This document shows positions 9,001-46,653 of a DNA stretch of 64,000 nt, piece after piece. How positions within the stretch are numbered: position 1 is the stretch's first letter; the number at the start of each line of letters is the position of its first letter. The stretch is from Lytechinus pictus (Eukaryota), in NCBI RefSeq assembly GCF_037042905.1, contig NC_087250.1:6076001-6140000 (forward strand), written 5' to 3'. Position numbers and translations under genes: made by a program. The notes beneath the pieces were generated by a model that was not told the origin of the DNA, made no database searches, and saw only the letters and a program-made list of their open reading frames with translations.

Positions 9001-12000
9001 GCCTGGATTAACTTTGGCTACGCCTAATATTAAGTGGATTTTGTGCTTACCAAATTACAACCACCTTTACTTAGGACCTCTACTGGCAGCTCTCAATGTC
9101 ATAAACAATTATCATAACAAATAAATAAATCATATAACTAGTAATATGTTTTTTCTGACACTTGGGATAATTTGAGGAAATAGAAGCTTAAGTACTAAAC
9201 GACAATTCAAGTAAATTTCTCCAAAGCAATGGTAAGTGCTTCTTGGAAAGGAAAGCACGCTTTGGAATTTTGAAATAAATTGACGGGGCCTTTAACTATT
9301 ATCAGGGCCGCTTTCAAATCGAAATTAAGAACTTACTGGAAAAATTTTTACTTTTGACATCCTATTGAGTAATTTAGAATTTTTTTCCTTTGCAATTCGA
9401 AGGTTTCTTCGGTTTTAGAAGCCTGGCAATCCCCACATCCAAAATCTCAAGAAATGAGATCACTTTCAAAACGCGGCATCTACAAGTGTTTGCGCTGTCA
9501 TCAAACAATCTCCAGGGACTCCAGCTGAGATGTGCAATTTTTCAGCCAGTAATCATGGATCCTACACAGAATCCAACACTTCGCATTTACATACTGCATC
9601 CTTGTATGAACTATGTACAGGTATATAACATATTAATTACAAGTGAGTCTGTTGCGGAAATATTAAAAGATATTCTTGAAAGCTTATAAAGAAGGTGACC
9701 TTTATTTTTGGAACGCAAAGACCGAGCCAAAGCGCGGACTCTAGCAAAATCGAATCATTTGTCTTTTTCATCCATTTTTGAAATGATAATGTTGCATCTT
9801 TGCAGTATTTTGTTCGATTTCTGATTTCCTCGTCTCTATACTTGTTTTTTTTTTTAATATTTTTTCTTTATTTTTATATTGTGTATTTTTTTATCTTCTT
9901 GCTTTTTTTCCCTCTTTCTCTTATTGTCATTTCTTTCTTTATGTCTTTCTGTTTTTATTTATTCTCATTTATTAATGAACTAATTTTCTCTCGGTTTCGT
10001 GCCCGCATTTTATTGCACGTATTAGGCCTTGTCCTTAAGCCTTCGATCATATCAATGATCTGTAAAAATGCAAGGTTTATCCAATAAAGCAGATTTTTAT
10101 TTTATATCCTCCAAATATATCTGTTCCATGGCATTCACATTCCTTTGATGTATGATTAATTGAAAAGTGCTATATATATTTTATTATTATCTTTTTTTTT
10201 TTTTTTTTTTTTTTTTTTTGGGGGGGGGGGGCATTCCAAAAACTGTAAATAGACTTACAGGAAACACCTTGCACATGATTTGATTTTTTTTTCAGGATAT
10301 AGTGAGATCACAGAAATGTTCGCCTGTCGCCTACTGTCAAGTCATGGAAGACTTAAAGTTCTCTATAGATTCATCAACAAGAGACCTAAGAATCGTTTGC
10401 CGCATCGGAACTGCAACGTTCAAAAGAATGGTGATAGTTTTGTCAAATTTTATTATCATAATAATATGCGTTGTAAGATGTCTAACAATAATAAATGTAT
10501 ATTACATTGAACATTGCACCTTATTCTACTAGAAGAACTGATGGAAATGGAAAAATTAAATCATTTAAAAGTAAATTTAACCGAAGATAGACGATGAGGT
10601 CTCTAGCTAAACACGTTGGCTATGTTATTCCATAACGCACTTTTCGTAGGTTAGCGAGAGCAAGGTTTCAGTATAGTCTAAATTGGTTAAATGATTATTG
10701 AGTGTTTTTTTTTACAATTACACAATATACATGTAGTTAATGCAAATGCAATTGGCTATCAGTTAGAGATACTGTAAACAAACATGTCGGGGTCCAAAGT
10801 TAGAAATAAAGAATACATTTCTTTTCATGTATCTTTTGACCTCTACTCCAAATCATTTTATCCGGACCGCTATCATTATCACTATAATCATCACCATTAT
10901 TCTCATCTTAATCATCTTCATCATCGTCATTGTCGTCATCACCATCATCATCAATACCATCATCACTATCCTAATTACCATCATCATCATTCATCATCCA
11001 AACATCATGATATTCACCATTACAAAGATCATTATTGGAATAATTACCATTATCTTAAGTTTTGGCATCTTGAATAAATTCTGTTCTGTCTTCCTTCTTG
11101 ATATTGCATTGCTTTTTTTCATAATAACTATTTTTTTAATTCATAACTCATTTATAACATCTTAATACTCACCTTTAAAGATACTGATTAAAGGTATTCT
11201 ATGCGGAAAGGTCAGCCATGTAGACTTTGAGCTTCAGTTTACTCCCAAGGAGAAAGGAAAGAAGAAAGTCGAGATGACCATTCGGGAAAGGTCAATAATT
11301 TGATGGGCTTTTTCATTGTTTATACATCCTTCATCACTATCCGCACCATTACTATCACGATGTCATAATCACCATCGCCATCATTATCACCAAAATCCAC
11401 ACCATCACCATAATCCTACCATAACCACCACCACCATCATCATTATAATCATCATTATTATCACCACCACCATTACACAACAGTCAATCATAATTATCAT
11501 CATCATCAACATCATCACCATCTTCATCATCGCACACATCATCGTCATCACCACAATCATCATGATCATCATCATTATCATCATCACCATCAATATTATC
11601 AATATTATTATCATCACCATCATTTATGAATATCAGTTTCATCATCACCACCGTTAATTATTGTCACCATCATTGTCATCATTATCAATATCATCCATTA
11701 TTACCACTATAATCATCAATTATCATTATTGGTATTATTATCATCATCCTATTTTTTTTTTATCTTAATGAAGTTCTGTTCTGTCTTTCTTCCTAATACT
11801 GCATTTTCTTTTCGTAATAGCCACTTCTACTAATTTATAACTCGTGTTTAAAATTCTACGACTCACCTTCCTTTTCCACTAACCAAGATACCCATTGAGG
11901 GGGTATTAAGCGGAAGGATAAGCCATGTAGACTTCGAGCTTCAGTTCACTCCCAAGGAGAAAGGAAAGAAGAAAGTCGAGATGACCATTCAGGAAGGGTC

Positions 12001-15000
12001 AATACAGTATGCAGAAAGCAAGTTCGAGACGGCAATAGAAGGTAAACACATGAAATGAAACAAAATCAGCATAATTTACACAGCATAATTAATTCCTTTG
12101 TGCAGATTAATAAAAAAGGAGATTTTTTAGTAATCAAATTCAGTAAGTCGACACCACCTTAATCCTAACAAGCAACAACACCTCTAAAGATGAATTGTAA
12201 GCGCTATACATTATTGGTAATATCATATTTGTCACCCCTACCCTTTTCCCCTCTGAAAAAACAACAACTATCAAATATGTATTGTATTCTGTTTTCCTCA
12301 TATTCAAATACGATTGATGACTAAGTTGTTACGTGAAAATAAATATAATATTATGGAATAAGGTGGCTGATTTTTTTTATTCAGCGTCAGTTTTCCTTAT
12401 GCTTTTTAAGGGCAAAACATTTTCATATTTTTTCACTTCTTGTAATCATGTCTTTGCTCTAGGCCCATACATTTACTGACAAAAAATATGTATTGTGTTT
12501 GTATTACAGAAAGAAATACGAAATGATTTAAAACTAAATATTGGGTAGCTCGATGATTATCTCTGCAATGTTTATGTCTGAAATATGTAAAACAATTAAA
12601 AGCTCTATATTTTATTTTTCTCTTCTGTCTGATACAGATGAACCAGATTATACGCGAGATCAAAAGGACTCGTAAGTATAGAACTGTTACGGTAACCATT
12701 AAACAGCTTTCATTATTTCAATCAGTGATAGACCCAAAAATTTTCTTCTCGAGAAAAAAGAAGAAAATCCGCTTCAAGGCTTCGCATATTTTCCGTTACG
12801 CTGTTCCGGTCGCAATTTTGGTGAAAAGCGGCCGCAGCTCGCTGTCCGACCATCGCCTCTGCGCTAGCGCGCCCGACAGTCGTGCCGCCGGGCTAGCTGC
12901 AAGTACGTTCCAGAGGGATGCATACGCACTCGCACGCAGGCGACCCGTTCCAAGGACCCCCGTTTTCACAAACATTTGTAGTTCCGAAGCCCGTTCCGAG
13001 GACCCTGCTTTTTACAATGAGCCCGCTCCAAGGCCCCCGTTTTTTGTCTCGCCCGCGGCACACCCCTAACACTTTTTTGGTCGAGTGCCCCCCCCCCGGG
13101 GGTCATATGCATACTAAATTTTCAAGCAAACTGCCTGAAGCACAAGCAATAACTAGCCCAAAAGATCATGCATTAGCCACTGCTTTATTTCGTATGTATA
13201 TCCCATTGATTGTGTTTGAACCCATTTCTTGCCCTCAGACAGCAAGTGCTAGCGGTTTGAACAATAGCGACGTCACGCTTGTGCGAACACAATTTGTATC
13301 AACTCCAGTGCATGTGGCAATGCAAAGTATAGCTTCTCTCCTACAAAATCTTTTCCTTAGACGTGGTCTCAAACTAATTTTGTATTTGTTTCTAAGATAT
13401 ACTGAAGCTGGCATTCAGTTTGGGCGTACTAGGAATAAAACATGTTAGACGGGTCAATGTATGGTTTGACCCGGAACAAATTGCAACAAATGATTTTTCA
13501 ACTGTTTCTGGCAGTATTTGACCTCAGAAATAACATATTAGAAATGTACCAAAATCCGCATCCGGGAAAGTGGTTATTTTCAAGATGGCGTCCAAGATGG
13601 CTTCCATTTACTAAAAATTGATGTAACTCACTCATTATCTACCCTAGAATCCTATTTGGGTTCATATTCCATGGTCCAATGGGTAAACGAATTTATTTAT
13701 ACAAGTTAGAGTTAATATTAGCACTCTAGGATACCAGGAAAATCCAAGATGGCGCCAAAAATGACTGCCGTAGGCTACAAAATCCACAATTTATCTAGTA
13801 CTTGAGTGGCTTTAATTGGTTTCCATTCGATTGTTTTAATGGTGAAGTAGTACATCGGGACAAGTTACAAGGACAACCAGTGGTCTGGTGGTTCCAAAAA
13901 TCCAAGATGGCTTCCAAAAATTGAGTTTAAAATGGCTGTTTATACTTAAAATGGACATAGCTTATATCACATCCACCCGAGAGATATTATTCTGGCGTCT
14001 AGACCATGGTTTCAATGGTCAAATAATACATTTGGGACAAGTAACAAGGACGGTCAGTTGTCCGGTATGTAAAAAAATCCTAGATGGCTTCCAAAAATGG
14101 AGTAAAAAAATGGTGTTGCTACTTAAAAAAAAAACCAAACATAGTTTGTTCAATATCCGGGAATATGATTTTTGTGCCTACCCAAATTTGCTCAAAAAAC
14201 GTGATTTAAAAATTCACAAATGTATCATTATTATTTTTCTTTGACTAATTTAAGGCCTCCTAACCATGTTGTACATAATTTCCATCGAAAAAAAGTCGAA
14301 AACATGTTTATATCACCATGATCTTAAAAAAAATGTGTCTAGGTCAAGATTTAGTACTTTTGAATATTTATTTGAATATCAACAGCTGAGCGTATGCATT
14401 AATTATCATTAGGTCATATTATTCAAAATGAATTTCGAGGAGTTAAAAAAGGGATTTAAGAGAAACATTGTACCATTGCTTCGGTACTGCAATAATTAAT
14501 TGGAGGGAATCGGTAAAATTCAGTAATGCTTCTACCACACAATTATGTCCTACCTATCGAAAGTAAAGATCAAGTTCACTTAATGTTACTAAAATAAGGG
14601 TAATGTTTTGTTGTACATACTATTTTATTTACTTGTAGACACGGTCATTTGCAGTACGTGTCCGACGGCATTCTAAAGATCTTGGCAGAAGAAATCCGAT
14701 CACCGAAAGAATTAAAGTCCCTTGGCTACCAGCTTGGATTCTCTCCATCAGCTACCAAGAAATACCTCATCCGACCGGAGTTATCCATGGAGGTGCTTCG
14801 TGATTGGAGGCGCCGGGTCCGACCAAGTCAACAGATTGACGAGCTTCATGCAGCCTTGAAAAATGCTGGACTAGGACAGTCAGCAGAAATCTTGTTACCT
14901 GAACGTAAGTAGGCCATTTTGAGTTATAAATTCGTAGCACATGGTCAACAATTTATATCAATAACATGCTACATTAATCTCATTTTTATTTTAACATATT

Positions 15001-18949: not shown

Positions 18950-21900
18950 AAACCAGTCTCCTTTGTTTTTCACTGTAATATATAGGCCAATCTCAAGTTT
19001 GCGTTACTATCTTTGCGTTATATATCATGTTATCATGATTGTAATATATACAATGTAGGGAGATATAATTGTGTTATTCATGACTGTTTACATATACCCC
19101 AACTAAAGCTTTCATTTCATTGGACTAATTGGAAACCAGCCTCCGTTTTTATTATATACAGGCCGATCTCAAGTTTGCGTTACTGTCTTTGCGTTATATA
19201 GCATGCTATCATGATTGTAATATATACAATGTAGGGAGATATAATTGTATTATTCACGACTGTTTACATATATCCCAACTAAAGCTTTCATTTCATTGGA
19301 ATAATTTGAAACCAGCCTCCTTTGTTTTTACTATATATAGGCCAATCTCAAGTTTGCGTTTCTATCTTTGATTTATATATCATGTTATCATGATTGTAAT
19401 ATACATAATGTACAGTGTAGGGAGATATAATTGTGTTATTCACGACTGTTTACATATATTCCAACTAAAGCTTTCATTTTATTGGAATAATTGAAAACCA
19501 GCCTCCTTTGTTTTGACTATATATAGGCCAATCTCAAGTTTGCGTTAGTCTCTTTGCGTTATATAGCATGCTATCATGATTGCAATATATATAATGTAGG
19601 TAGATATAATTGTGTTATTCATGACTGTTTACATATATCCCAACTAAAGCTTTCATTTCATTGGAATAATTTGAAACCAGCCTCCTTTGTTTTTATTATA
19701 TACAGGCCGATCTCAAGTTTGCGTTACTGTCTTTGCGGTATATAGCATGTTATCATGATTGTAATATATACAATGTAGGGAGATATAATTGTGTTATTCA
19801 CGACTGTTTACATATATCCCAACTAAAGCTTTCATTTCATTGGAATAATTTGAAACCAGCCTCCTTTGTTTTTACTATATATAGGCCAATCTCAAGTTTG
19901 CGTTTCTATCTTTGCGTTATATATCATGTTATCATGATTGTAATATACATAATGAACAGTGTAGGTAGATATAATTGTGTTATTCATGACTGTTTACATA
20001 TATCCCAACTAAAGCTTTCATTTCATTGGAATAATTTGAAACCAGCCTCCTTTGTTTTTATTATATACAGGCCGATCTCAAGTTTGCGTTACTGTCTTTG
20101 CGTTATATAGCATGTTATCATGATTGTAATATATACAATGTAGGGAGATATAATTGTGTTATTCACGACTGTTTACATATATCCCAACTAAAGCTTTCAT
20201 TTCATTGGAATAATTTGAAACCAGCCTCCTTTGTTTTTACTATATATAGGCCAATCTCAAGTTTGCGTTTCTATCTTTGCGTTATATATCATGTTATCAT
20301 GATTGTAATATACATAATGAACAGTGTAGGTAGATATAATTGTGTTATTCATGACTGTTTACTTATATCAACTCAAGCTTTCATTTCATTGGAATAATTG
20401 AAAACCAGCCTCCTTTGTTTTTACTATATATAGGCCAATCTCAAGTTTGCGTTACTGTCTTTGCGTTATATAGCATGCTATCATGATTGTAATATATATA
20501 TAATGTAGGCAGATATAATTGTGTTATTCATGACTGTTTACATATATCAACTAAAGCTTTCATTTCATTGGAATAATTGGAAATCAGCCTCCTTTGTTTT
20601 TACTATATATAGGCCAATCTCAAGTTTGCGTTAGTCTCTTTGCGTTATATAGCATGCTATCATGATTGTAATATATATAATGTAGGCAGATATAGTTGTG
20701 TTATTCACGACTGTTTACATATATCCCAACTAAAGCTTTCATTTCATTGGAATAATTGAAAACCAGCCTCCTTTGTTTTGACTATATATAGGCCAATCTC
20801 AAGTTTGCGTTAGTCTCTTTGCGTTATATAGCATGCTATCATGATTGTAATATATATATAATGTAGGCAGATATAATTGTTTTATTCATGACTGTTTACA
20901 TATATCAACTAAAGCTTTCATTTCATTGGAATAATTGAAAACAAGCCTCCTTTGTTTTTACTATATATAGGCCAATCTCAAGTTTGCGTTACTGTCTTTG
21001 CGTTATATAGCATGTTATCATGATTGTAATGAATATAATGTAAGGAGATATAATTGTGATATTCACGACTGTTTACATATATCCCAACTAAAGCTTTCAT
21101 TTCATTGGAATAATTGGAAACCGGCCTCCTTTGTTTTTACTATATATAGGCCAATCTCAAGTTTGCGTTACTGTCTTTGCGTGATATAGCATGTTATCAT
21201 GATTGTAATATATATAATGTAGGGAGATGTAATTGTGTTATTCACGACTGTTTACATATATCCCAACTAAAGCTTTCATTTCATTGGAATAATTGGAAAC
21301 CAGCCTCCTTTGTTTTTACTATATATAGGCCAATCTCAAGTTTGCGTTACTGTCTTTGCGTTATATAGCATGCTATCATGATTGTAATATATATAATGCA
21401 GGGAGATATAATTGTGTTATTCACGACTGTTTACATATATCCCAACTAAAGCTTTCATTTCATTGGAATAATTGGAAACCAGCCTCCTTTGTTTTTACTA
21501 TATATAGGCCAATCTCAAATTTGCGTTACTGTCTTTGCGTTATATATCATGTTATCATGATTGTAATATACATAATGTACAGTGTAGGGAGATATAGTTG
21601 TGTTATTCACGACTGTTTACATATATGTACTAAAGCTTTCATTTTATTGGAATAATTGAAAACCAGCCTCCTTTGTTTTGACTATATATAGGCCAATCTC
21701 AAGTTTGCGTTAGTCTCTTTGCGTTATATAGCATGCTATCATGATTGTAATATATATATAATGTAGGCAGATATAATTGTGTTATTCATGACTGTTTACA
21801 TATATCAACTAAAGCTTTCATTTCATTGGAATAATTGAAAACCAGCCTGCTTTGTTTTTACTATATATAGGCCAATCTCAAGTTTGCGTTACTGTCTTTG

Positions 21901-35388: not shown

Positions 35389-35665
35389 TATATTAAATAT
35401 TATACAGATATTGCCTATCTAGAGTTTGAATATAACATTTCCTCTCCCAGACGGAGTTATATTTTTCCCAAGAGATAATATTTTGCCCGAAGCGCGCAGC
35501 GCTGAGGGAAAATATTATCCCGAGGGAAAAATATAGCTTCGGAGGGGAGTTGAAATGTTATTTATTAAAACGATAGACCAGGCAATAGAGAATAATGACG
35601 GCGATATGGCCATTCTAAAGGTTCACTCAAGCGTGACGCGCGCACAAAAGAATATGACGTAATAC

Positions 35666-36020
35666 ATTAGCATAACAATGAAGGGTTGAATAGGGGAAAT
35701 TAGCATAACAATGGAAGAGTTGAATAGGGATAATTAGCATAACAATGGATGAATAGTCGGGAAAGATGGCCATTGAATAGGGCGTTGATTAGCATAACAA
35801 TGGAAGAGTAGTCTGGAAGGATGGCCATTGAATAGGGATCATTAGCATAACAATAGCGAGTGCGGAAAGATCGGATGGCCATTGAATAGGGGTTGATTAG
35901 CATAACAATAGCGAGTGCGGAAAGATCGGATGGCCATTGAATAGGGGTTGATTAGCATAACAATGCCGAGTGCGGAAAGATCGGATGGCCATTGAATAGG
36001 GGATCATTTAAATAACAATA
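35666..36020 (-). promoter_or_regulatory. Subterminal minisatellite (33-55 bp units) carrying 7 Sox-Oct composite-like motifs (C/T)ATTGTTATGCTAAT, left end
   Basis: ATTAGCATAACAAT at 35666, 35699, 35733, 35788, 35841, 35896, 35951. Confidence 0.65.
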
Positions 36021-36250
36021 ATCGCAGTGACGTAGTAATGTTATGTATCTGTTAGAAGGGACGCGTAGTCTCCTTGGCAACGAATGAACAACCATAAAGT
36101 TGAATGGAAGGATTAAAAGAGTGTTATTGTTAGAGTAGATTTTGGGTAATATAATAGCACTGGGAAAAAAGGGCAGGAGTGTCAAAGTTTGACTTACCCT
36201 TTTAATATTTCCATTCGAGCGTCGATCGTCCAAAATATTGTCCATATTAA

Positions 36251-39200
36251 CCCTTTGCGTGCGACGGGCTTCCACAGAAGCCCAGCGAGTCGTTCACTTA
36301 GCTACGACGGGCTTCTACAGAAGCCGAGATTTGTTTGGTTTAATTCGATGAAGTTTTTCAGCTTTTTCGTAATTGTTATGTACTAAAACTTTTCCCACCA
36401 TTTCCTTTATAAACCTATTTCAATAATCAAATGAAAAAAATATACAGCTACGTGGAGAAAAATCCCCAAAATAGGAAATCATTTCAACTTTACCCGAATT
36501 TTTCGTTGGAGTCAAACGGGAAGGATAAATTTTGTGACGTGCACGTACGCGCGCGCACACTAGGCCTGATCACGTGATTTATTTTGATCACGTGATTTGA
36601 TCCATATCGTTGTTCTGAAAGATAAGCTGAAATCTTTTCTGGAAGATCGTCGCGTAATAACCTACGCGTTTATTCACCATTTTCGTCTTATTTGTTTCAT
36701 CAAGAAGATATTACTCTAGATAGAATGATATCTCCTTGGTTTCATCGATCGATTGTATTTTCAGAAAAACAAAAAGCTTGTAATGTATTTTTAGAACTTT
36801 GAGCTGATCGCGGTGCGCTTATGAACTTTTTCCCTCCCCATCATCCCTCTTCTCATTATTTTTCTCTACTATTCTAAAAAAAAGAAGAGAAAAGAAAGCA
36901 GTTTAGCACACCATTTATCTTATGCTCTTTTCAAAAGGGAAACGTCCATGTAGTTCATGATATCGGCACTACCCAAAACAAAAGAATGTCTGGGCGGCAA
37001 CTCAAACGAATTCCTTCCGAAAAGAGCAGGATACAGATGGTCAACGCCCCGAACAAAAGGAAGATTAGCGTTTATCGGCAAGATTACCTATTGAATGCTC
37101 TTCGTACTTAGCAATACAAAAAGTTTTTATGAATACTTTTTTCCGACCAACATACCTTATCTAAAAAAAAGAAAAAAAATGTCTCAATTACCAACAAAAC
37201 AGGTGCTTATGACATCGGTCAGTGATTCATTTTGCATAAAAGCGCTTCCCTGGGTGATGATGCATATGAGGATGAAAGAAGAATCATTTAGGGAAATTAT
37301 AGATTATAGAAAAAAAATGTTCAGATGTCACGGAGAACGAGAGAAAATTAGAGAGGGAGAGATAAAAGGGGGAATAGACAAGTGCTCTTTTGCTAACATT
37401 CCATAATATCTACTTAAACGAATAATAACATGACTTTCTTTTTTTTTTGTTATATTACTTTAAAAAAAGTCCCAAAACGTTTGTTTGTCGCAACTCGGTC
37501 CTCAGACCCTTGTCAAACTGATGACTTTGTATTATTATTCTTGTTTGACCTAGCCCCCCTTCCCGATGGAAATGTTCTGACCTACACTGTCATATTGCTC
37601 GTTTGTCTCCTCTCTCCTATGTTCTGTTTTAATTGCTATAGTAACACGGTGGAAAATATAATAATAAAGACCGTCCTGTCCAGTTTTTTCCCCCGTTACG
37701 ACCAAAAGAAAATAATTTTAAAAAATCGCATTGGGGCGCTTCCCATTGTTAGCATCCAAACCAAAATATTTGGAAAAAGATTTATGCTATTCAGGGACAG
37801 CAATGTATTTGTTTATGGTCCAGGGTTTGTGCTGTGGGCCGGGGGTGAATCGGCTAAAAAAATCAAATTGTTTTAATTCATGTCATTTTACAGAATGAAT
37901 TTATTATAGGATAGGTTTTAGATGCTCTTTATCTTATTTTTATTTTTTCTCTCCCAGATAATTATTTTTTGCATTGAAAAGTTGACGGAAACATAATCAA
38001 TTAAAATGATAAAACCAATAATGAACTAGAAGTTTTCTCGTCTGAAATGGAGGAAATATATATGATGAGAAATTACGTTAAGGCTCCCACTATAAAGAAA
38101 ACACTGGCGTGTCTGGGGTGTCACCCGACAGAACTCTCTCAATCCTACAAACTTTTATTCACGTGCGACCTACACTCCCCCCAAGGGTTGATACCGACCC
38201 CAATTGTATTGATTTTCCTACTTTTTCGCGAATTTCTATTTTTTTACCGGCGAATAGCGTGGTAGAAAAGATTCATATAGAAAAAAAAATATGTTTCCGT
38301 TACTGCAAACATTTTGGGCACTAATCCTGGTTAGCTTCAAAACCAAAATATCTGATTTTTAAAATAAAAAACAGGGGCCGCTGAGCGTTTTGATAATGGA
38401 GGGGTTGAGCTGAATGTGGGAGGGAGTGGACTGGCCAAAAAATCACAAATTTATACAGTCTTCGGATTTGTTGTATGTTTGCTGAAAGGGGTGAGGACTG
38501 AAACTTCCTACCAACTCCGCAGCCTTTGGACTATTAGATAGAACAATTAAAACGATAAAGACAAAAATGAATTCTAACTATTAGGAATGTTTTTTTTTTA
38601 TAATTTATTTATTACTTTGTTTTCGGTTGTAAAATCAAGGAGACAAATTAAAAATAGAACAAAACGAAAGAACAAATAAAAAAAAATGCTTTAGATTGCG
38701 GATGTTATAATCAATTCAAGAAAAAATAAAATGTAAAAAAAATGTAAAATGACAGGTACTGAGAAGAAAAATTAGAGAGACAGGATTGAGGGTGGTGGGG
38801 GCGGGTATATACCTCGTAATCCAGATCGGGGAGAAGGAAGACGATACAGATATAATTTAAATGATAAGAACTCAGAGAAAAAAGGATGTTGAACGGAGGG
38901 GATATATAAAGACGATAGATATAAGACAAGGGAATGAAAGCGGTAAAAAATACATAGTTACAGGTGAGAAACCAAAGAAAGGGAAAACGAAGAAATCCCT
39001 AATTGGTACCGTTTTATAATTAGATTGACAAACGTGCAATAATTTTAAAAAAATACCATCAGCCAATCAAATAGAAGGATTTCAGTAGCTTTTTAAAATG
39101 GGCCCCTTGTACACTTTTGAACCCCTCCCCCCCCCCGCTTTCTCTCGCTCTCTTATTGCTCTTTTTTTCTTCTATTTCAAAGGAAATAAACAGAAAATAA

Positions 39201-40575
39201 AGCAATTTAGAACGCCGTTTATCCTCTGCTCTTTTGAAAGTGAAAACGTCCACGCAGTTCTTGATCTCGGCACTCCCCAAACAAAAGAAAATCATGGCGG
39301 ACGCTCAAACGAATTCCTTATAAAAAAAGCAGGAGACAAATAGCAAACGCCCTGAATAAAAGGAAGATTAGTGTATTTCGTCAAGATGACATACTGAATG
39401 TTTTTCATATTTAGCAATACAAAAAGCTCTTAGGAATACTGCTTTTCATATTACGACAGTAAAATTAAAAAAGTAAATGTTTACTCACAAAATATTGCCA
39501 AAACATGCAGGCGCTTAAGACATGGTAAGAACATTTTCTTCTTGAGCACGACAATGCTTTCTTCATTAACAAAAACCCAGAACGGTTAAAAAATGAATAA
39601 AATGAAAGAGCAAAATAACGCACTTTTAATTTAGATGCTACAATTTCAATAGATATATAGAATAAATATAGAAATAATTTACTTTCTCTCATTGTGACGA
39701 ACAGTAATCGGTAGCATGGTTATTTTTGGAGGGAAAAAGGAGATAGAAAAAATGAAACGTAGAACGAGACGAGGAGAGCGTTGGGGGTATGATTTCAGAT
39801 CCACTATTCGAGTCACATTTATCCCCTTCACTCTTTGAGATTGCAACAGGAAATCAGATCGAATACTGGTATGCAATCTTCAGGAACAAAATTATTTTTA
39901 TTACAAGCAATAATTCATGAATAGAAGAAACCAAAGGCGATTTTTAGTGAAACATTGAGGCCACCGTCTTGAAGCCCAGAAGTCTCAAATTAGTTTCGGA
40001 CTTTCGTTGCGCAGCATCATCATTGTACTTGCAAAGGAACATTTACCATTTTTTATTCATTCTGGAAAATAAAGGTATTTGGTATGCTGTGATTTCACAA
40101 AAAAAGGATTATCGTCGTAATTATACACTTTGCAAATGATCTCTCTACAAGGAGGTAAAGAGATCATTCATGAGTAGCGTGACAATATAATAGGCAATGA
40201 AAAAAGCACTAGAGCAGACAACAAAGCGGTATCGATCGAACCCGACCTGTCCGCGTGTGCTGATTGCCCTTACGCATTTTTGTACACAGTGCCTATTGAC
40301 TTGGGGAAAAGCGAAGATTTTACAAAATAACACGACTTTTTCCTCGTAAATTTCTCAACTATTCTGTTGATTTGAGAAGCAAAACCTTTATTTCTAGAAA
40401 GAAAAATGTCTGATCTTTCATCTTTGCATTTACTAAAAATCCTGAAAATACATCAGTTTGGCGCAATTAGCAATTGATTCGGAAAACACCGCCACAGATC
40501 CAAATACCAGCAATGTACCAAAACGGCTCCGCCGCAGGGAGAGGTATCGGGATTCGCGGGCCCGCACGCAAAGGG
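36251..40575. mobile_element. Non-autonomous piggyBac-type element (4325 bp)
   Basis: TTAA|CCCTTTGCGTGCG ... CGCACGCAAAGGG|TTAA; the mirror arm holds the empty site (gacaatgTTAAtatggac, 45105-45108); no transposase ORF visible. Confidence 0.92.
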
Positions 40576-40696
40576 TTAACATTGTCATAATATTCAAAAC
40601 CTAGTTTCCCATGTCCATATATTACAGTGAAACATATTTACAATGAAGATTAAGTGATGCCATTATACATATATACAACTCATATTCTATGGAAAA

Positions 40697-41140
40697 TTAA
40701 TCGATTTCATCTATAGGTAAGATCCCGTTTATGGTTCCTTTGTATAGAATTTTCGACGCTGTGTATCCTTTTTTGAACCAGCATGGATGTTTGTAGAATG
40801 AGAAGGAGGCTGCTGGAATCTTCGTGCTTGCAATGTGATTGAGATAGACATCGATGAATAATTTATTATTACAAAATCGTTGAAGAATTCGTCTCTTCCA
40901 CCCTTTAGACCAATCTTCTTTCAACTCGTGAGGCATGCCGTGCCTGTGTAAGAGTTCGAATTTCTCTTGGTCTGAAATAGTTTCGTAGTGATTGGAGATG
41001 AGACACCCTGGTATCGCTACGCAACGATTTTCTATCGACGCCATCCCTGGAACACAATCCTTCTCAAACCTGTCCAGCGTGTCTTTGTGATCTCCCCAAA
41101 TTAATTCCTTTGCAACTCCTTGATTTTCCATCGCTTCCAT
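40697..41140 (-). CDS. 147-aa hypothetical protein of the Polinton-like element (left-arm copy)
   Basis: ATG-initiated intronless ORF with upstream TATA-like and two CCAAT motifs; differs from the right copy by one residue (H/Q). Confidence 0.6.
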   Translation of the reverse strand: MEAMENQGVAKELIWGDHKDTLDRFEKDCVPGMASIENRCVAIPGCLISNHYETISDQEKFELLHRHGMPHELKEDWSKGWKRRILQRFCNNKLFIDVYLNHIASTKIPAASFSFYKHPCWFKKGYTASKILYKGTINGILPIDEID

Positions 41141-41998
41141 CGATTTTTCCTCTTAATTTTGGATCTTCCCCCATACTCTTCTCCCTCTATCATCTATATT
41201 ATAATAGATGAAAGAAAACGAACCATTCAAGATGTCATGGTCGAAAACAACCTTTGATTTTCTAACAAAGCGAGGAATGCATGAACTAATCTTTGTATCT
41301 TCACTCCAATCGGTTATTTTGGTAAACGGTAGAAAGCAAACTACTTAACGATGTCTTGGTCGAAAAAACTTTTGATTTTTCGAACAAAGCGAGGAATGTT
41401 AGAAACTAATCTTTGCATCTCCGCTCCAATCAGTTCTTTCATACTTCCATAGTTTTCATTTTGACCCACATACACGTCTCTCTTTATTGGCTTTCTGACT
41501 CACACAAATTGTATTACATAGATGGCACTAGCTTCAGGTCAACTCCATTCACGCACATGGTGATAACATAGAACACTGTACAATTATATGTTATTATTAT
41601 TCATTTTTATTCCATTTTAAGTCCAGACATATACACAAAGAAGATTTTGATACAAAGGTAAAAGTAATCGAAGTACGTATTGTGTAGACAAAATAATTGT
41701 TAACTGTTATATCTTCGCTGTAACACAATCCATGTATAGGCCTATGGCTGGTATGAATATTGACGATAGAAATAATAGAGTTCAATCTGTCATTTTTGTT
41801 GACGGCGTTTTCAAGTTCTTTGATTATTTTTGTTGACAAGGTGGTGTTGTGCCTTTAGTTGTAGACTCCATCCTCACTCTCTGTTTCTTCATCATCGTCG
41901 TCATCGTCACCTCCATCTTGGAACTGGAATAAACCATCAAATTGTGGACCATGCCTGGCTAAGACTCTTTGTACGGCTTTCTGGAATTCCATGCCATT

Positions 41999-42532
41999 TT
42001 ATAGTCTTTCCTTGAGATCAGAAACGATCTCGTGATTGACGTCAGCTTCTCCTAGGCTAATGTTTTGCTGCAAGAACTTGGAGTAAAGATCGAAAAAGAT
42101 GCGTTTGACGGCCCACAGTAATTTCACGTGCGCTTTTTCTTTAGCGTCTTCTTCTTCCATTCCCTCTGAAATATATTTCTGATATTTTTCGTCTCTCAGG
42201 TCCTTGGTGGCTGTCATGGCCTGCTCCAACCATACTTGGTAAGCAAGGTTGTCTTCAATTTCATCCATGTTATCTGTCTCTGACATTGACGATTCATCCT
42301 CTCCATCGTTTTCTGAATCACTAGATTCTTCAACTCCCTCCGTTTGAGAGGGTGGTTCGGAGTAATCATCCTCACTTGTACCTACTTCAGCGTCGGAAGA
42401 TTCAATTTTGCCTTCATCTTCTGTATCAGGGTGAGCTTTTTGTTCATGCCTCTGCATATCAAACTTCCGACTATAGGTCCTATTGCATTGGGAACATGCG
42501 TAACGCCGGTTGGACATATCAAGAGCGTTCAT
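41999..42532 (-). CDS. C2H2 zinc-finger, acidic protein (left-arm copy); frame continues past TAA to 41855
   Basis: YACSQCNRTYSRKFDMQRHEQKAH is a canonical C2H2 finger, followed by a D/E/S-rich tract and a helical region. Confidence 0.75.
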   Translation of the reverse strand: MNALDMSNRRYACSQCNRTYSRKFDMQRHEQKAHPDTEDEGKIESSDAEVGTSEDDYSEPPSQTEGVEESSDSENDGEDESSMSETDNMDEIEDNLAYQVWLEQAMTATKDLRDEKYQKYISEGMEEEDAKEKAHVKLLWAVKRIFFDLYSKFLQQNISLGEADVNHEIVSDLKERL

Positions 42533-42609
42533 GTTGACTCGATGCTGTTTAGGTCAGAATTGAAGCAAAGTGTTATCAATCGTATCTTTATACATGATGT
42601 CAACATCCA

Positions 42610-43075
42610 TAAACGAATCCGTAGATCCGTAATGGAATCCGTATATCCGCTAAACGAATCCGTAATTCCGTTCAACGATTCCGTATAAATCCGCTAAACG
42701 AATCCGTAGATCCGTAAACGAATCCGTAAATTCACTAAACGAATCCCAAGATCCGTAAAAGGATTCGAACTTCTTTGAATCATATTGATAGAATTGACAA
42801 AGTTTAATCTGTTTTAAATCAAGGAACAACCAATGACTTTGATATTGGAGTACATATTTTATTACTACCAATGGTTTAAAGAGTTATACAGACCTCATGG
42901 AGGAATTTATGACAATACTGATGATTCGCAATATTTGGGATTCGTTTAGTGGATTTACGGATTCGTTTACGGATCTACGGATTCGTTTAGCGGATTTATA
43001 CGGAATCGTTGAACGGAATTACGGATTCGTTTAACGGATCTACGGATTCCATTACGGATCTACGGATTCGTTTAT
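42610..43075. repeat. Central (G)AATCCGT/GATCCGT short-repeat blocks in inverted orientation around the unique spacer 42750-42934
   Basis: More than 12 copies of atccg/ttccg-type units per side. Confidence 0.85.
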
Positions 43076-43151
43076 GGATGTTGACATCATGTATAAAGAT
43101 ACGATTGATAACACTTTGCTTCAATTCTGACCTAAACAGCATCGAGTCAAC

Positions 43152-43685
43152 ATGAACGCTCTTGATATGTCCAACCGGCGTTACGCATGTTCCCAATGCA
43201 ATAGGACCTATAGTCGGAAGTTTGATATGCAGAGGCATGAACAAAAAGCTCACCCTGATACAGAAGATGAAGGCAAAATTGAATCTTCCGACGCTGAAGT
43301 AGGTACAAGTGAGGATGATTACTCCGAACCACCCTCTCAAACGGAGGGAGTTGAAGAATCTAGTGATTCAGAAAACGATGGAGAGGATGAATCGTCAATG
43401 TCAGAGACAGATAACATGGATGAAATTGAAGACAACCTTGCTTACCAAGTATGGTTGGAGCAGGCCATGACAGCCACCAAGGACCTGAGAGACGAAAAAT
43501 ATCAGAAATATATTTCAGAGGGAATGGAAGAAGAAGACGCTAAAGAAAAAGCGCACGTGAAATTACTGTGGGCCGTCAAACGCATCTTTTTCGATCTTTA
43601 CTCCAAGTTCTTGCAGCAAAACATTAGCCTAGGAGAAGCTGACGTCAATCACGAGATCGTTTCTGATCTCAAGGAAAGACTATAA
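43152..43685 (+). CDS. C2H2 zinc-finger, acidic protein (right-arm copy); frame continues past TAA to 43829 (225 codons)
   Basis: Same translation as the left copy; TATAAA at about 43092; AATAAA at about 44073. Confidence 0.75.
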   Translation: MNALDMSNRRYACSQCNRTYSRKFDMQRHEQKAHPDTEDEGKIESSDAEVGTSEDDYSEPPSQTEGVEESSDSENDGEDESSMSETDNMDEIEDNLAYQVWLEQAMTATKDLRDEKYQKYISEGMEEEDAKEKAHVKLLWAVKRIFFDLYSKFLQQNISLGEADVNHEIVSDLKERL

Positions 43686-44249
43686 AATGGCATGGAATTC
43701 CAGAAAGCCGTACAAAGAGTCTTAGCCAGGCATGGTCCACAATTTGATGGTTTATTCCAGTTCCAAGATGGAGGTGACGATGACGACGATGATGAAGAAA
43801 CAGAGAGTGAGGATGGAGTCTACAACTAAAGGCACAACACCACCTTGTCAACAAAAATAATCAAAGAACTTGAAAACGCCGTCAACAAAAATGACAGATT
43901 GAACTCTATTATTTCTATCGTCAATATTCATACCAGCCATAGGCCTATACATGGATTGTGTTACAGCGAAGATATAACAGTTAACAATTATTTTGTCTAC
44001 ACAATACGTACTTCGATTACTTTTACCTTTGTATCAAAATCTTCTTTGTGTATATGTCTGGACTTAAAATGGAATAAAAATGAATAATAATAACATATAA
44101 TTGTACAGTGTTCTATGTTATCACCATGTGCGTGAATGGAGTTGACCTGAAGCTAGTGCCATCTATGTAATACAATTTGTGTGAGTCAGAAAGCCAATAA
44201 AGAGAGACGTGTATGTGGGTCAAAATGAAAACTATGGAAGTATGAAAGA

Positions 44250-44460
44250 ACTGATTGGAGCGGAGATGCAAAGATTAGTTTCTAACATTCCTCGCTTTGT
44301 TCGAAAAATCAAAAGTTTTTTCGACCAAGACATCGTTAAGTAGTTTGCTTTCTACCGTTTACCAAAATAACCGATTGGAGTGAAGATACAAAGATTAGTT
44401 CATGCATTCCTCGCTTTGTTAGAAAATCAAAGGTTGTTTTCGACCATGACATCTTGAATG
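44250..44460 (+). promoter_or_regulatory. Duplicated 120-bp unit with ATTGG (CCAAT) boxes upstream of the 147-aa ORF (mirror at 41224-41434)
   Basis: gattggag..agat.caaagattagtt...cattcctcgctttgtt...ttttcgacca.gacatc at 44253 and 44373; tattataata at about 44478. Confidence 0.5.
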
Positions 44461-44543
44461 GTTCGTTTTCTTTCATCTATTATAATATAGATGATAGAGG
44501 GAGAAGAGTATGGGGGAAGATCCAAAATTAAGAGGAAAAATCG

Positions 44544-44987
44544 ATGGAAGCGATGGAAAATCAAGGAGTTGCAAAGGAATTAATTTGGGGAGATCACAAA
44601 GACACGCTGGACAGGTTTGAGAAGGATTGTGTTCCAGGGATGGCGTCGATAGAAAATCGTTGCGTAGCGATACCAGGGTGTCTCATCTCCAATCACTACG
44701 AAACTATTTCAGACCAAGAGAAATTCGAACTCTTACACAGGCACGGCATGCCTCACGAGTTGAAAGAAGATTGGTCTAAAGGGTGGAAGAGACGAATTCT
44801 TCAACGATTTTGTAATAATAAATTATTCATCGATGTCTATCTCAATCACATTGCAAGCACGAAGATTCCAGCAGCCTCCTTCTCATTCTACAAACAGCCA
44901 TGCTGGTTCAAAAAAGGATACACAGCGTCGAAAATTCTATACAAAGGAACCATAAACGGGATCTTACCTATAGATGAAATCGATTAA
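44544..44987 (+). CDS. 147-aa hypothetical protein of the Polinton-like element (right-arm copy)
   Basis: Intronless ORF MEAMENQG...ILPIDEID*. Confidence 0.6.
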   Translation: MEAMENQGVAKELIWGDHKDTLDRFEKDCVPGMASIENRCVAIPGCLISNHYETISDQEKFELLHRHGMPHELKEDWSKGWKRRILQRFCNNKLFIDVYLNHIASTKIPAASFSFYKQPCWFKKGYTASKILYKGTINGILPIDEID

Positions 44988-45334
44988 TTTTCCATAGAAT
45001 ATGAGTTGTATATATGTATAATTGCATCACTTAATCTTCATTGTAAATATGTTTCACTGTAATATATGGACATGGGAAACTAGGTTTTGAATATTATGAC
45101 AATGTTAATATGGACAATATTTTGGACGATCGACGCTCGAATGGAAATATTAAAAGGGTAAGTCAAACTTTGACACTCCTGCCCTTTTTTCCCAGTGCTA
45201 TTATATTACCCAAAATCTACTCTAACAATAACACTCTTTTAATCCTTCCATTCAACTTTATGGTTGTTCATTCGTTGCCAAGGAGACTACGCGTCCCTTC
45301 TAACAGATACATAACATTACTACGTCACTGCGAT

Positions 45335-45689
45335 TATTGTTATTTAAATGATCCCCTATTCAATGGCCATCCGATCTTTCCGCACTCGGTATTGTTATGC
45401 TAATCAACCCCTATTCAATGGCCATCCGATCTTTCCGCACTCGCTATTGTTATGCTAATCAACCCCTATTCAATGGCCATCCGATCTTTCCGCACTCGCT
45501 ATTGTTATGCTAATGATCCCTATTCAATGGCCATCCTTCCAGACTACTCTTCCATTGTTATGCTAATCAACGCCCTATTCAATGGCCATCTTTCCCGACT
45601 ATTCATCCATTGTTATGCTAATTATCCCTATTCAACTCTTCCATTGTTATGCTAATTTCCCCTATTCAACCCTTCATTGTTATGCTAAT
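45335..45689 (+). promoter_or_regulatory. Subterminal minisatellite with 7 Sox-Oct composite-like motifs, right end
   Basis: (C/T)ATTGTTATGCTAAT seven times, interleaved with CCCTATTCAA(TGG). Confidence 0.65.
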
Positions 45690-46373
45690 GTATTACGTCA
45701 TATTCTTTTGTGCGCGCGTCACGCTTGAGTGAACCTTTAGAATGGCCATATCGCCGTCATTATTCTCTGGCAATATCTGTTATATTATATAGTCTATTTT
45801 GATTCGCCATCATAAATTGCATTCATCATCTGGCTCAAACCCGAAATTCTTGCTACAGCTCTGATCCATCTACGTCATAATATATGTTTTTTTAATACAT
45901 CAAGCGCGTTCTTCATGCAATCGACGCGTTAACATTAGCGCGTACATTAAATAAACTACCTTGTTACGCAACTTGTATGCAGCGAGTGACGTCACCTTAG
46001 TGAATATAACGCCGCAATTGAAAATACAACGCAGTATAGGCCCTGAGGTGACGTCAAAACCTAGAATATAACAAATGCGATCCTCGCAGCTATGGTCACG
46101 TGATGGCGTATTGACCTATCACTGATTCGAATCTACATAACCTATGTAATATATTAGAATATTAGAATATAATATAGAATAGGCTTAGGAACATAATTAG
46201 GTAATCAAATAATTGAATGTGAAGTTCCTGGTTTCCCCAATGCTTAAAAAACGACACGATCAAAGCCGACTCAAGACCGAACAAAGGAATGAATGATTAC
46301 ATAAATGACATATTTTGTCATTGTGCAAGAAATTATAATTATGTTACCACCCATACATGCTTTAAAATCGATT

Positions 46374-46653
46374 CTGGGCCCCGTCTAACAAAGAGCTACG
46401 ATTGACCCGATCAATCGCAACTATGGACGGCCAGCAACGTTAACATCTATATATGCATGTTTGTTCAAAATATTTTTTAGCTATGATGTATATTCATGCA
46501 TTCATTGTTTTCTTGAAAAATTACCGCGCTTCTCTTTGCATATAAAGGTCACTGTGCATCATGATTCGTAGAAGAAAATTATGACACTGATGGATTTCCA
46601 TAGAGTTACAATTGATCGGATCAATCGTAAATCTTTGTAAGATGGGGCCCTGG
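46374..46653. mobile_element. MITE with GGGCCCC TIRs (PIF/Harbinger-like)
   Basis: gggccccgtctaacaaagagctacgattgacccgatcaat ... attgatcggatcaatcgtaaatctttgtaagatggggccc. Confidence 0.8.

What the first reader, a model, noticed from the sequence alone, without database searches (positions are those of the whole stretch)
35581..45774. Giant palindromic (snap-back) Polinton/Maverick derivative integrated with a clean 6-bp TSD
Seen: after removing the piggyBac insert, the element is about 5.86 kb. One 2.84-kb arm is mirrored around a 185-bp spacer (mirror coordinate sums 85684 inner, 81355 outer). Ends are AGAGA...TCTCT and GGCAAT is duplicated. Each arm holds two outward-pointing accessory genes and no pPolB, integrase, ATPase, protease or capsid gene. 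Known: Polintons have AG..CT ends, long TIRs, 6-bp TSDs and protein-primed replication. Inference: this is one genome end copied back on itself, like a copy-back defective viral genome. The TSD suggests it was integrated as a unit by a helper's integrase, so it may be a satellite/defective-interfering class of Polinton.
Basis: partly seen in the sequence, partly recalled or inferred. Interest (0 to 1): 0.9.

Follow-up and report, generated by a model that had tools for sequence, protein, structure and literature searches.

The report
Recurrent palindromic Maverick-like elements, sea urchin
A mobile DNA element in a sea-urchin genome has replaced one half of itself with a mirror copy of the other half; relatives at other loci did this independently several times, and their ends look like those of virus-like Maverick/Polinton elements, although no helper element was found.

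Summary
Window 35587-45768 is a 5.85-kb palindrome: two 2,834-nt arms with 6 mismatches and no indels, around a 185-nt centre. A 4,325-bp piggyBac-like insert interrupts it, and a 6-bp duplication (GGCAAT) flanks it. The host is the sea urchin Lytechinus pictus.

Seven further loci show a young, multi-copy family (inner arms of the near-identical copies 0-0.8% apart) of short non-autonomous elements. They carry a conserved C2H2 zinc-finger gene (dN/dS about 0.2) and an orphan ORF. Six complete elements all have perfect, different 6-bp duplications. Their ends read AGAGAA... or AGTAGT..., resembling or matching the two end motifs published for vertebrate Mavericks. I found no polymerase, integrase or capsid gene, and the host genome could not be searched for a helper.

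The parent of the window copy is not a 15-20-kb Polinton. It is a ~4.8-kb element with 0.58-kb inverted ends. Its left part was replaced by an inverted copy of its right part, joined at an 8-nt microhomology.

Five of the six complete elements are palindromes, each with a different junction. Palindromes therefore arise repeatedly rather than spread as a class. Two mechanisms fit: copy-back on a linear replicating copy, and in-place repair anchored on the inverted ends (as in Galileo).

The parts
35581..35586 (.). Left copy of the 6-bp target-site duplication GGCAAT
35587..36250 (-). Left arm, outer part (terminus AGAGAATAATGACGG...). 35587-36162 corresponds to the family's ordinary 0.58-kb terminal inverted repeat.
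35666..36020 (.). Subterminal tandem repeats (34-bp and 55-bp units) in the left arm; the mirror array is at 45335-45689
36251..40575 (.). Nested non-autonomous piggyBac-like insert in the left arm only: 13-bp inverted ends CCCTTTGCGTGCG, TTAA at 36247-36250 and 40576-40579, no recognisable transposase
40580..42749 (-). Left arm, inner part, mirror of 42935-45104
40697..41140 (-). Orphan 147-aa ORF, left-arm copy, intact; no homologue found anywhere
41858..42532 (-). C2H2 zinc-finger / acidic / helical-domain gene, left-arm copy. It aligns to the 225-aa relatives and is broken by one premature stop, the same one as in the right arm.
42610..42766 (.). Array of 21-bp tandem repeats upstream of the zinc-finger gene; the mirror array is at 42938-43079
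42750..42934 (.). Asymmetric centre ('spacer'). It is not new sequence: it is collinear with the left arm and equals L003:9591-9784 of the non-palindromic parent structure.
42935..42942 (.). Junction microhomology TTGGGATT, shared by the two parental sequences where the inverted copy joins
42935..45768 (+). Right arm (2,834 nt), ending ...CCGTCATTATTCTCT. 45193-45768 corresponds to the family's ordinary terminal inverted repeat.
43152..43826 (+). Zinc-finger gene, right-arm copy, broken by one premature stop
44544..44987 (+). Orphan 147-aa ORF, right-arm copy, intact; one amino-acid difference from the left copy
45769..45774 (.). Right copy of the 6-bp target-site duplication GGCAAT

Best explanation
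Shown. The feature is a palindromic derivative of a young, multi-copy, non-autonomous element family of Lytechinus pictus. The ordinary member is about 4.8 kb. It consists of a 0.58-kb terminal inverted repeat, a 1.2-kb non-coding region U, a 0.19-kb stretch, then a 2.2-kb part carrying a conserved zinc-finger gene and an orphan ORF, then the other terminal repeat. In the window copy, the left repeat and U have been replaced by an inverted copy of the whole right part, joined at an 8-nt microhomology. The 0.19-kb stretch is left as the asymmetric centre. A piggyBac-like element later landed in one arm.

Inferred, family (about 0.7). The family is moved by a Maverick/Polinton-type integrase supplied in trans. 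All six complete elements have exact 6-bp duplications and ends AGAGAA... or AGTAGT....

Inferred, mechanism (about 0.45). The palindrome formed on a linear copy that was replicating from its end. An incomplete strand carrying only the gene-bearing end folded back on a short inverted microhomology and primed its own completion. This gave a hairpin whose replication yields a two-ended palindrome, the only way a one-ended fragment regains two usable ends. That molecule was then integrated, creating GGCAAT.

Each palindrome in the family has its own junction, so the process recurs and the palindromes do not spread as a lineage.
For: Structure and duplication.

Host and gene family: (99% match to L. 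pictus XP_063968459.1).

Parent structure: L001, L003 and L005 carry repeat-U-spacer-arm. L001 is complete, with its own duplication GTAGTA.

Independent palindromes with different junctions and microhomology: window 8 nt; L004 6 nt; L006 with no clear microhomology in the printed sequences (the two BLAST alignments overlap by 6 nt); L108 about 5 nt.

Six perfect 6-bp duplications, all different: GGCAAT, GTAGTA, TATACT, GACCTA, AGCATT, AAAGCA.

Ends: AGAGAA in four elements and AGTAGT in two. Vertebrate Mavericks are reported with (AG)3//(CT)3 or (AGT)2//(ACT)2 ends and 6-bp duplications (PMC8097293).

Recent activity: inner arms of the near-identical copies differ by 0-0.8%.

Zinc-finger gene under purifying selection: dN/dS 0.20 against the 72% relative, with family members down to 23% identity.

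In favour of copy-back to the very tip: the window and L108 arms are collinear through the variable 55-bp repeat array, whereas the two ends of the ordinary copy L001 differ by about 140 nt of repeat array.
Against: No pPolB, integrase, capsid, ATPase or protease gene was seen in the window or in any of the eight loci. The L. pictus genome could not be searched for an autonomous element with these ends.

AGAGAA matches (AG)3 at only 5 of 6 positions.

In L004 and L006 the two arms differ by one and by about four 55-bp repeat units, and carry more mismatches, in the terminal repeat than in the inner arm. That is what in-place repair retaining the original left end would give.

No palindrome junction was seen twice, so nothing shows a palindrome was ever integrated as such.

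Extension of inverted ends by recruiting internal sequence is documented for the cut-and-paste element Galileo (PMC3573991).

An unrelated long-armed element with TA..TA ends lies in L108, so long inverted arms are not special to this family in this genome.

The loci were found through the zinc-finger gene, which biases the sample.
Confidence: 0.5

Rival explanations
1. Same family and same parent, but the palindrome formed in place after an ordinary insertion. A break in the left part (U) was repaired using the element's own right arm as template. The homologous terminal repeat anchored the repair, and the tract ran inward until it rejoined at an 8-nt microhomology. This is extension of the inverted ends by recruiting internal sequence, as described for Galileo. 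Only host repair is needed, with no special replication mode.
For: In L004 and L006 the arms differ in repeat number and have more mismatches in the terminal repeat than in the inner arm, as expected if the original left end was kept. Every junction is unique. The TIR1-F1-F1-TIR2 structures of Galileo are attributed to conversion between inverted ends, and that paper states that expansion was also reported for Polinton repeats (PMC3573991). Microhomology junctions are typical of host break repair (PMC7467729, PMC10622511; abstracts only, as listed).
Against: The window and L108 arms are collinear to the tips through a highly variable repeat array. Five of six complete elements are palindromic, including both end types and a 72% relative. 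That is a very high rate for accidental repair in copies less than 1% diverged. For L108 no non-palindromic parent with AGTAGT ends was seen.
Confidence: 0.35
2. The family is not Maverick/Polinton-related. It is a non-autonomous foldback-type cut-and-paste transposon of another superfamily that happens to make 6-bp duplications (for example IS3EU/GingerRoot-like or an undescribed group). The palindromes are ordinary repeat dynamics.
For: No Polinton gene was found anywhere. The long, internally repetitive ends resemble foldback elements. IS3EU/GingerRoot also make 6-bp duplications (PMC10045372), and an element with that hallmark lies in L108.
Against: IS3EU/GingerRoot ends are TA..TA, whereas here they are AGAGAA and AGTAGT. 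The latter is the exact published Maverick motif, and it occurs on two different relatives (PMC8097293). Galileo makes 7-bp duplications, and FB, from memory, 9-bp ones, not 6.
Confidence: 0.25
3. The palindrome is an assembly artefact, such as a chimeric foldback read or a collapsed or mis-joined repeat.
For: Arms at 99.8% identity are hard to assemble, and I had no read data.
Against: There are six arm differences. The 4.3-kb insert is present in one arm only. The 6-bp duplication is intact. The asymmetric centre is collinear with the parent sequence. Comparable structures occur at four other loci on other chromosomes with different junctions.
Confidence: 0.03

Closest known systems
Non-autonomous Polinton/Maverick elements
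   Same: Exact 6-bp target-site duplications in six of six complete elements. AG...CT ends, including the published (AGT)2//(ACT)2 motif and a 5/6 match to (AG)3. Terminal inverted repeats of several hundred bp. All as reported for vertebrate Mavericks (PMC8097293).
   Different: Only 4.8-6 kb, with no pPolB, integrase, ATPase, protease or capsid gene. Carries its own conserved zinc-finger gene of unknown function. No autonomous partner identified.
Copy-back / snap-back defective genomes of linear, end-primed replicons (adenovirus defective genomes and hairpin derivatives of yeast linear plasmids; recalled from memory, not checked here)
   Same: One genome end is duplicated in inverted orientation. 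The centre is short and asymmetric. The junction lies at a short inverted microhomology. The arms are identical to the very tip in the window and L108 copies. The structures arise repeatedly and independently.
   Different: These are integrated in chromosomes with target-site duplications. No extrachromosomal form, terminal protein or polymerase is known for them. Interference with a helper is untested.
Galileo and other foldback-like transposons with dynamic long inverted ends (PMC3573991, PMC4168063)
   Same: Long inverted ends built partly of tandem repeats. Extension of the inverted ends by recruiting internal sequence (TIR1-F1-F1-TIR2). Chimeric copies between subfamilies, comparable to the L108 mosaic of 98.6% and 78% segments.
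   Different: Galileo belongs to the P superfamily and makes 7-bp duplications. Here the duplications are 6 bp, the ends are Maverick-like, and the extension swallows the whole element.
IS3EU/GingerRoot transposons (PMC10045372)
   Same: 6-bp target-site duplications.
   Different: Their ends are TA..TA (occasionally TG..CA); here they are AGAGAA / AGTAGT.
Mu killer of maize, an inverted duplication of a transposon that silences its family (recalled from memory)
   Same: An inverted duplication of part of a mobile element, which if transcribed through would give a long hairpin RNA.
   Different: No expression or small-RNA evidence here. The genes in the window palindrome point outward from the centre.

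Membership tests
Polinton/Maverick (as a non-autonomous derivative) | 6-bp target-site duplication | tested here: met
   GGCAAT (window), GTAGTA (L001), TATACT (L004), GACCTA (L006), AGCATT (L108), AAAGCA (L002)
Polinton/Maverick (as a non-autonomous derivative) | Reiterated AG-type end motif, (AG)3//(CT)3 or (AGT)2//(ACT)2 (PMC8097293) | tested here: met
   AGTAGT...ACTACT exact in L108 and L002; AGAGAA...TTCTCT (5 of 6) in the window, L001, L004 and L006
Polinton/Maverick (as a non-autonomous derivative) | Terminal inverted repeats of tens to more than 1000 bp | tested here: met
   About 0.58 kb in the ordinary copies
Polinton/Maverick (as a non-autonomous derivative) | Encodes protein-primed DNA polymerase B, rve integrase, and capsid/ATPase/protease genes | tested here: not met
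   No such Pfam family in any ORF of the element or of the related loci. The only other ORFs of 150 aa or more in the window are the two zinc-finger copies and one untested 176-aa ORF at 12918-13448.
Polinton/Maverick (as a non-autonomous derivative) | Shares its termini with an autonomous Polinton in the same genome | not testable with these tools
   No tool searches the L. pictus assembly by DNA. 17-mer scans of the viral and metagenome collections gave only chance hits.
Copy-back / snap-back defective genome | One end duplicated in inverted orientation in place of the other end, relative to a known parent | tested here: met
   Window versus L003/L005/L001
Copy-back / snap-back defective genome | Junction at a short inverted microhomology with an asymmetric loop | tested here: met
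   8-nt TTGGGATT with a 185-nt centre. Other copies: 6 nt / 57 nt, about 5 nt / 22-36 nt, and in L006 no clear microhomology / about 700 nt
Copy-back / snap-back defective genome | Arms identical to the very tip | tested here: inconclusive
   True for the window and L108. L004 and L006 differ by 1 and about 4 repeat units in the terminal repeat.
Copy-back / snap-back defective genome | Formed on a replicating extrachromosomal genome; depends on and interferes with a helper | not testable with these tools
   No read, expression or helper data
   Five palindromic elements, five different junctions. The sample is small and biased.
Foldback / Galileo-like cut-and-paste elements | Long internally repetitive inverted ends, extended by recruiting internal sequence | tested here: met
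   PMC3573991
Foldback / Galileo-like cut-and-paste elements | 7-bp (Galileo, P superfamily) or 9-bp (FB, from memory) duplication | tested here: not met
   6 bp in all six elements
IS3EU/GingerRoot | TA..TA termini with 6-bp duplication | tested here: not met
   The duplication length fits, but the termini are AGAGAA / AGTAGT (PMC10045372)
piggyBac (the nested insert only) | TTAA duplication and short CCC...GGG inverted ends | tested here: met
   no transposase remnant, so non-autonomous

The most novel reading that the evidence does not exclude
The palindromes are chromosomal fossils of copy-back defective genomes of a Maverick-type, end-primed linear replicon. They would be the first sequence-level trace of that replication mode in an animal. 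The 4.8-kb zinc-finger-bearing element would be a satellite that keeps its own conserved DNA-binding protein while borrowing polymerase and integrase from a helper Maverick. The same gene module has been passed between replicons with three different Maverick-type ends.
Probability: 0.3. Interest if true: 0.8.

Novelty: new variant of a known kind. Interest (0 to 1): 0.55.

Why it matters
Mavericks/Polintons are thought to replicate as linear, protein-primed genomes, but this has been inferred from their genes, not observed.

This family is short and recently active. It has Maverick-type ends and throws off one-end-copied-back palindromes again and again, each with a readable microhomology junction. 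That gives a natural series of rearrangement products from which the replication or repair mode can be read by sequence comparison alone.

It also shows a non-autonomous element that keeps a gene of its own under purifying selection, which is satellite-like behaviour rather than simple decay.

Long perfect palindromes are fragile sites and possible sources of hairpin RNA. They may therefore matter for genome stability and for silencing of the family in a sea-urchin model species.

Tried and rejected
1. Exact look-ups of the two window ORFs in the gene-position index found nothing. The window copy is not annotated.

2. Four look-ups of related proteins on ENA contigs returned no DNA and no informative neighbours.

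3. The 147-aa ORF has no relative in the 5.8-billion word-indexed set. In 1.84 billion representatives the single hit is a plant-type repeat protein, which is spurious.

4. The zinc-finger protein model has a confident C-terminal helical domain (pLDDT above 90) but no fold match in PDB or BFVD. A profile search against PDB sequences matched only the C2H2 finger.

5. Scans of the viral and metagenome collections with the 17-nt terminus gave only chance matches, with none extending beyond 21 nt.

6. The inverted repeats flanking the older partial copy in L001 (14719-15350 / 20037-20673) are another repeat, not this family's ends.

7. Kapitonov and Jurka 2006 could not be read. Its statements are cited only through PMC8097293.

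8. A literature search found no report of palindromic Polinton derivatives.

9. Cluster look-ups gave no organism names for distant relatives of the zinc-finger protein.

10. Rejected: the idea that the 185-nt centre is new 'spacer' sequence. It is parental sequence.

11. Rejected: the idea that a 15-20-kb element is the direct parent.

An early notebook entry records the zinc-finger ORF as called by the ORF listing, and the tblastn table printed shows segment bounds. Both coincide with breaks in element genes. I noticed this later, have deleted nothing, and do not repeat those places here.


Full report
1. THE OBSERVATION

The repeat finder reports two inverted pairs: 40576-42749 / 42935-45108 (2,174 nt) and 35587-36251 / 45104-45768 (665 nt). 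An exact count gives two arms of 2,834 nt, 35587-36250 plus 40580-42749 against 42935-45768. They have 6 mismatches and no indel, and lie around a 185-nt centre at 42750-42934.

The ends read AGAGAATAATGACGG... and ...CCGTCATTATTCTCT. GGCAAT flanks both. The 28-nt terminus occurs only at these two places in the window, with 0 expected by chance.

The left arm is interrupted at a TTAA by a 4,325-bp insert (36251-40575). The insert has 13-bp inverted ends CCCTTTGCGTGCG and no recognisable transposase, so it is a non-autonomous piggyBac-like element.

2. HOST AND GENES

Each arm has two outward-pointing frames.

Zinc-finger gene. The first frame is 99% identical to a 225-aa 'uncharacterized protein' of Lytechinus pictus, so the window is sea-urchin DNA.
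- The protein has one genuine C2H2 finger (profile E = 2e-11 against PDB zinc fingers).
- It also has an acidic linker and a roughly 110-aa helical C-terminal domain. That domain is predicted with pLDDT above 90 and matches no solved or viral predicted fold.
- The family has at least 64 members down to 23% identity, several in multi-copy clusters.
- Against a 72%-identical relative its dN/dS is 0.20, so the protein is maintained by selection.
- In the window the gene carries one premature stop, the same in both arms.

Orphan ORF. The second frame (147 aa) is intact in both arms. It has no relative in any database searched and is absent from the 72% relative. It may not be a gene.

3. RELATED COPIES

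Exact look-ups of the 225-aa protein cluster fetched seven other L. pictus loci.

Ordinary form.
- L001 holds a complete, non-palindromic element (3884-12561) with the same AGAGAA ends and its own duplication GTAGTA.
- L003 and L005 share the same layout but have lost or interrupted right ends.
- The layout is a 0.58-kb terminal repeat, a 1.2-kb non-coding region U, then a 0.19-kb stretch identical to the window's 'spacer', then the gene-bearing 2.2 kb, then the other repeat. This form is about 4.8 kb.
- LINE fragments are nested in L001, L003 and L005.

The window palindrome. It equals the right part of the ordinary form, plus its inverted copy in place of the left repeat and U. The inverted copy runs 0.19 kb further than the direct one, which is why the centre is asymmetric. 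The join lies in an 8-nt microhomology, TTGGGATT.

4. THE PALINDROME IS NOT A ONE-OFF

- L004 (5276-12684, duplication TATACT) is a palindrome of the same end, with a different junction: a 6-nt microhomology and a 57-nt centre.
- L006 (6929-12995, GACCTA) is another palindrome of the same end. Its centre is about 700 nt and it has an extra internal deletion.
- L108 (8487-14526, AGCATT) is a palindrome of the other side. Its 3.0-kb arms run from a different terminus, AGTAGTATATATAGG..., through U and the zinc-finger gene, and meet inside the orphan ORF across 22-36 nt at a CCWGG microhomology.
  - Its inner 2.6 kb is 98.6% identical to the ordinary form.
  - Its terminal 370 bp is only about 78% similar to part of U, so it is a mosaic.
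- L002, the 72% relative (6638-12779, AAAGCA), has ends AGTAGTTATGGG... and is a complex palindrome.

Five of six complete elements are therefore palindromic, and no two share a junction. The inner arms of the near-identical copies differ by only 0-0.8%, so this happened recently and repeatedly.

5. WHICH SUPERFAMILY

Six of six complete elements have exact 6-bp duplications, all different in sequence. Their ends are AGAGAA (four elements) or AGTAGT (two elements).

Vertebrate Mavericks are reported to have 6-bp duplications and the end motifs (AG)3//(CT)3 or (AGT)2//(ACT)2 (PMC8097293). A 6-bp duplication is listed as characteristic of Polinton (PMC10045372). IS3EU/GingerRoot also give 6 bp but have TA..TA ends.

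The hallmarks therefore fit Maverick/Polinton. No polymerase, integrase or capsid gene was seen anywhere, and the host genome could not be searched by DNA. The assignment is an inference, which I put at about 0.7, not a demonstrated membership.

6. HOW THE PALINDROME FORMED

Two routes fit the sequence.

(a) Copy-back on a linear copy replicating from its end. An incomplete strand with one good end folds back on a short inverted microhomology and primes itself. Replication of the resulting hairpin gives a two-ended palindrome that can be integrated.
- This predicts arms identical to the tip, as seen in the window and L108 through the very variable 55-bp repeat array.
- It also explains the high rate, because a one-ended fragment can regain two ends only in this way.

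(b) Repair in place. A break in U is repaired from the element's own other arm, anchored by the terminal repeat. This is the route proposed for extension of Galileo's inverted ends (TIR1-F1-F1-TIR2; PMC3573991).
- This predicts that the original left end is kept. In L004 and L006 the arms do differ by one and about four repeat units there.
- Unique junctions fit both routes.

I favour (a) for the window copy at about 0.45, against 0.35 for (b).

7. VERDICT

- The parent is a short non-autonomous element rather than a full Polinton.
- The palindromes are recurrent products, not a spreading class.
- Integration 'as a unit' is unproven.

Extension of inverted ends is known in Galileo and, by citation, in Polintons. 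This is therefore a new variant of a known kind. It is interesting mainly as a natural series of junctions that bears on how Mavericks replicate, and as a non-autonomous element with its own conserved gene.

8. SLIP

An early note and a script table contain bounds that coincide with breaks in element genes.

Noticed in passing
window 36251-40575: Non-autonomous piggyBac-like element: 4,325 bp, 13-bp inverted ends CCCTTTGCGTGCG, TTAA duplication, no transposase remnant. It is present in the left arm only, so it inserted after the palindrome formed. No other copy in the window or the fetched loci.
   Followed up: yes
L108:15196-18810: A separate long-armed inverted-repeat element: 1.4-kb arms at 96% identity, about 770-nt centre, ends TACGAAGCCCC...GGGGCTTCGTA, 6-bp duplication CCATCG. 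TA..TA ends plus 6 bp is the hallmark reported for IS3EU/GingerRoot.
   Followed up: partly
window 46397-46652: About 630 bp to the right of the element lies a 250-bp stretch 76% similar to part of region U of the ordinary family members (L003:8978-9228, L001:9002-9242). It is probably an older repeat that U also contains.
   Followed up: no
window 35432-35561: A 56-nt imperfect inverted repeat (80% complementary, 18-nt loop) ends 20 bp to the left of the insertion site.
   Followed up: no
L001:4560-8790; L003:11829 onward; L005:12391 onward: LINE (reverse transcriptase / endonuclease) sequences are nested in three of the family copies, although the copies differ by less than 1%. L004 has an unexplained 1-kb insert (5457-6484) in its left terminal repeat, containing a 318-aa ORF with no Pfam match.
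   Followed up: partly
L001:17510-20039: An older partial copy of the same family, about 6% diverged, with its zinc-finger gene degraded, lying 5 kb from the complete L001 copy.
   Followed up: partly
window 42610-42766 and 43003-43079: Arrays of about 21-bp repeats (TAAACGAATCCGTAGATCCG-like) lie just upstream of the zinc-finger gene, and two of the four palindrome junctions fall in or beside them. They may be a promoter or binding array, or a fragile spot.
   Followed up: no
L108:8487-8860 versus L003:8577-8860: Region U of the AGAGAA-ended ordinary element is homologous (about 78%) to the terminal part of the AGTAGT-ended element, from exactly where that terminus aligns. The ordinary element therefore looks like one arm of an AGTAGT-type element enclosed between AGAGAA repeats.
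   Followed up: partly
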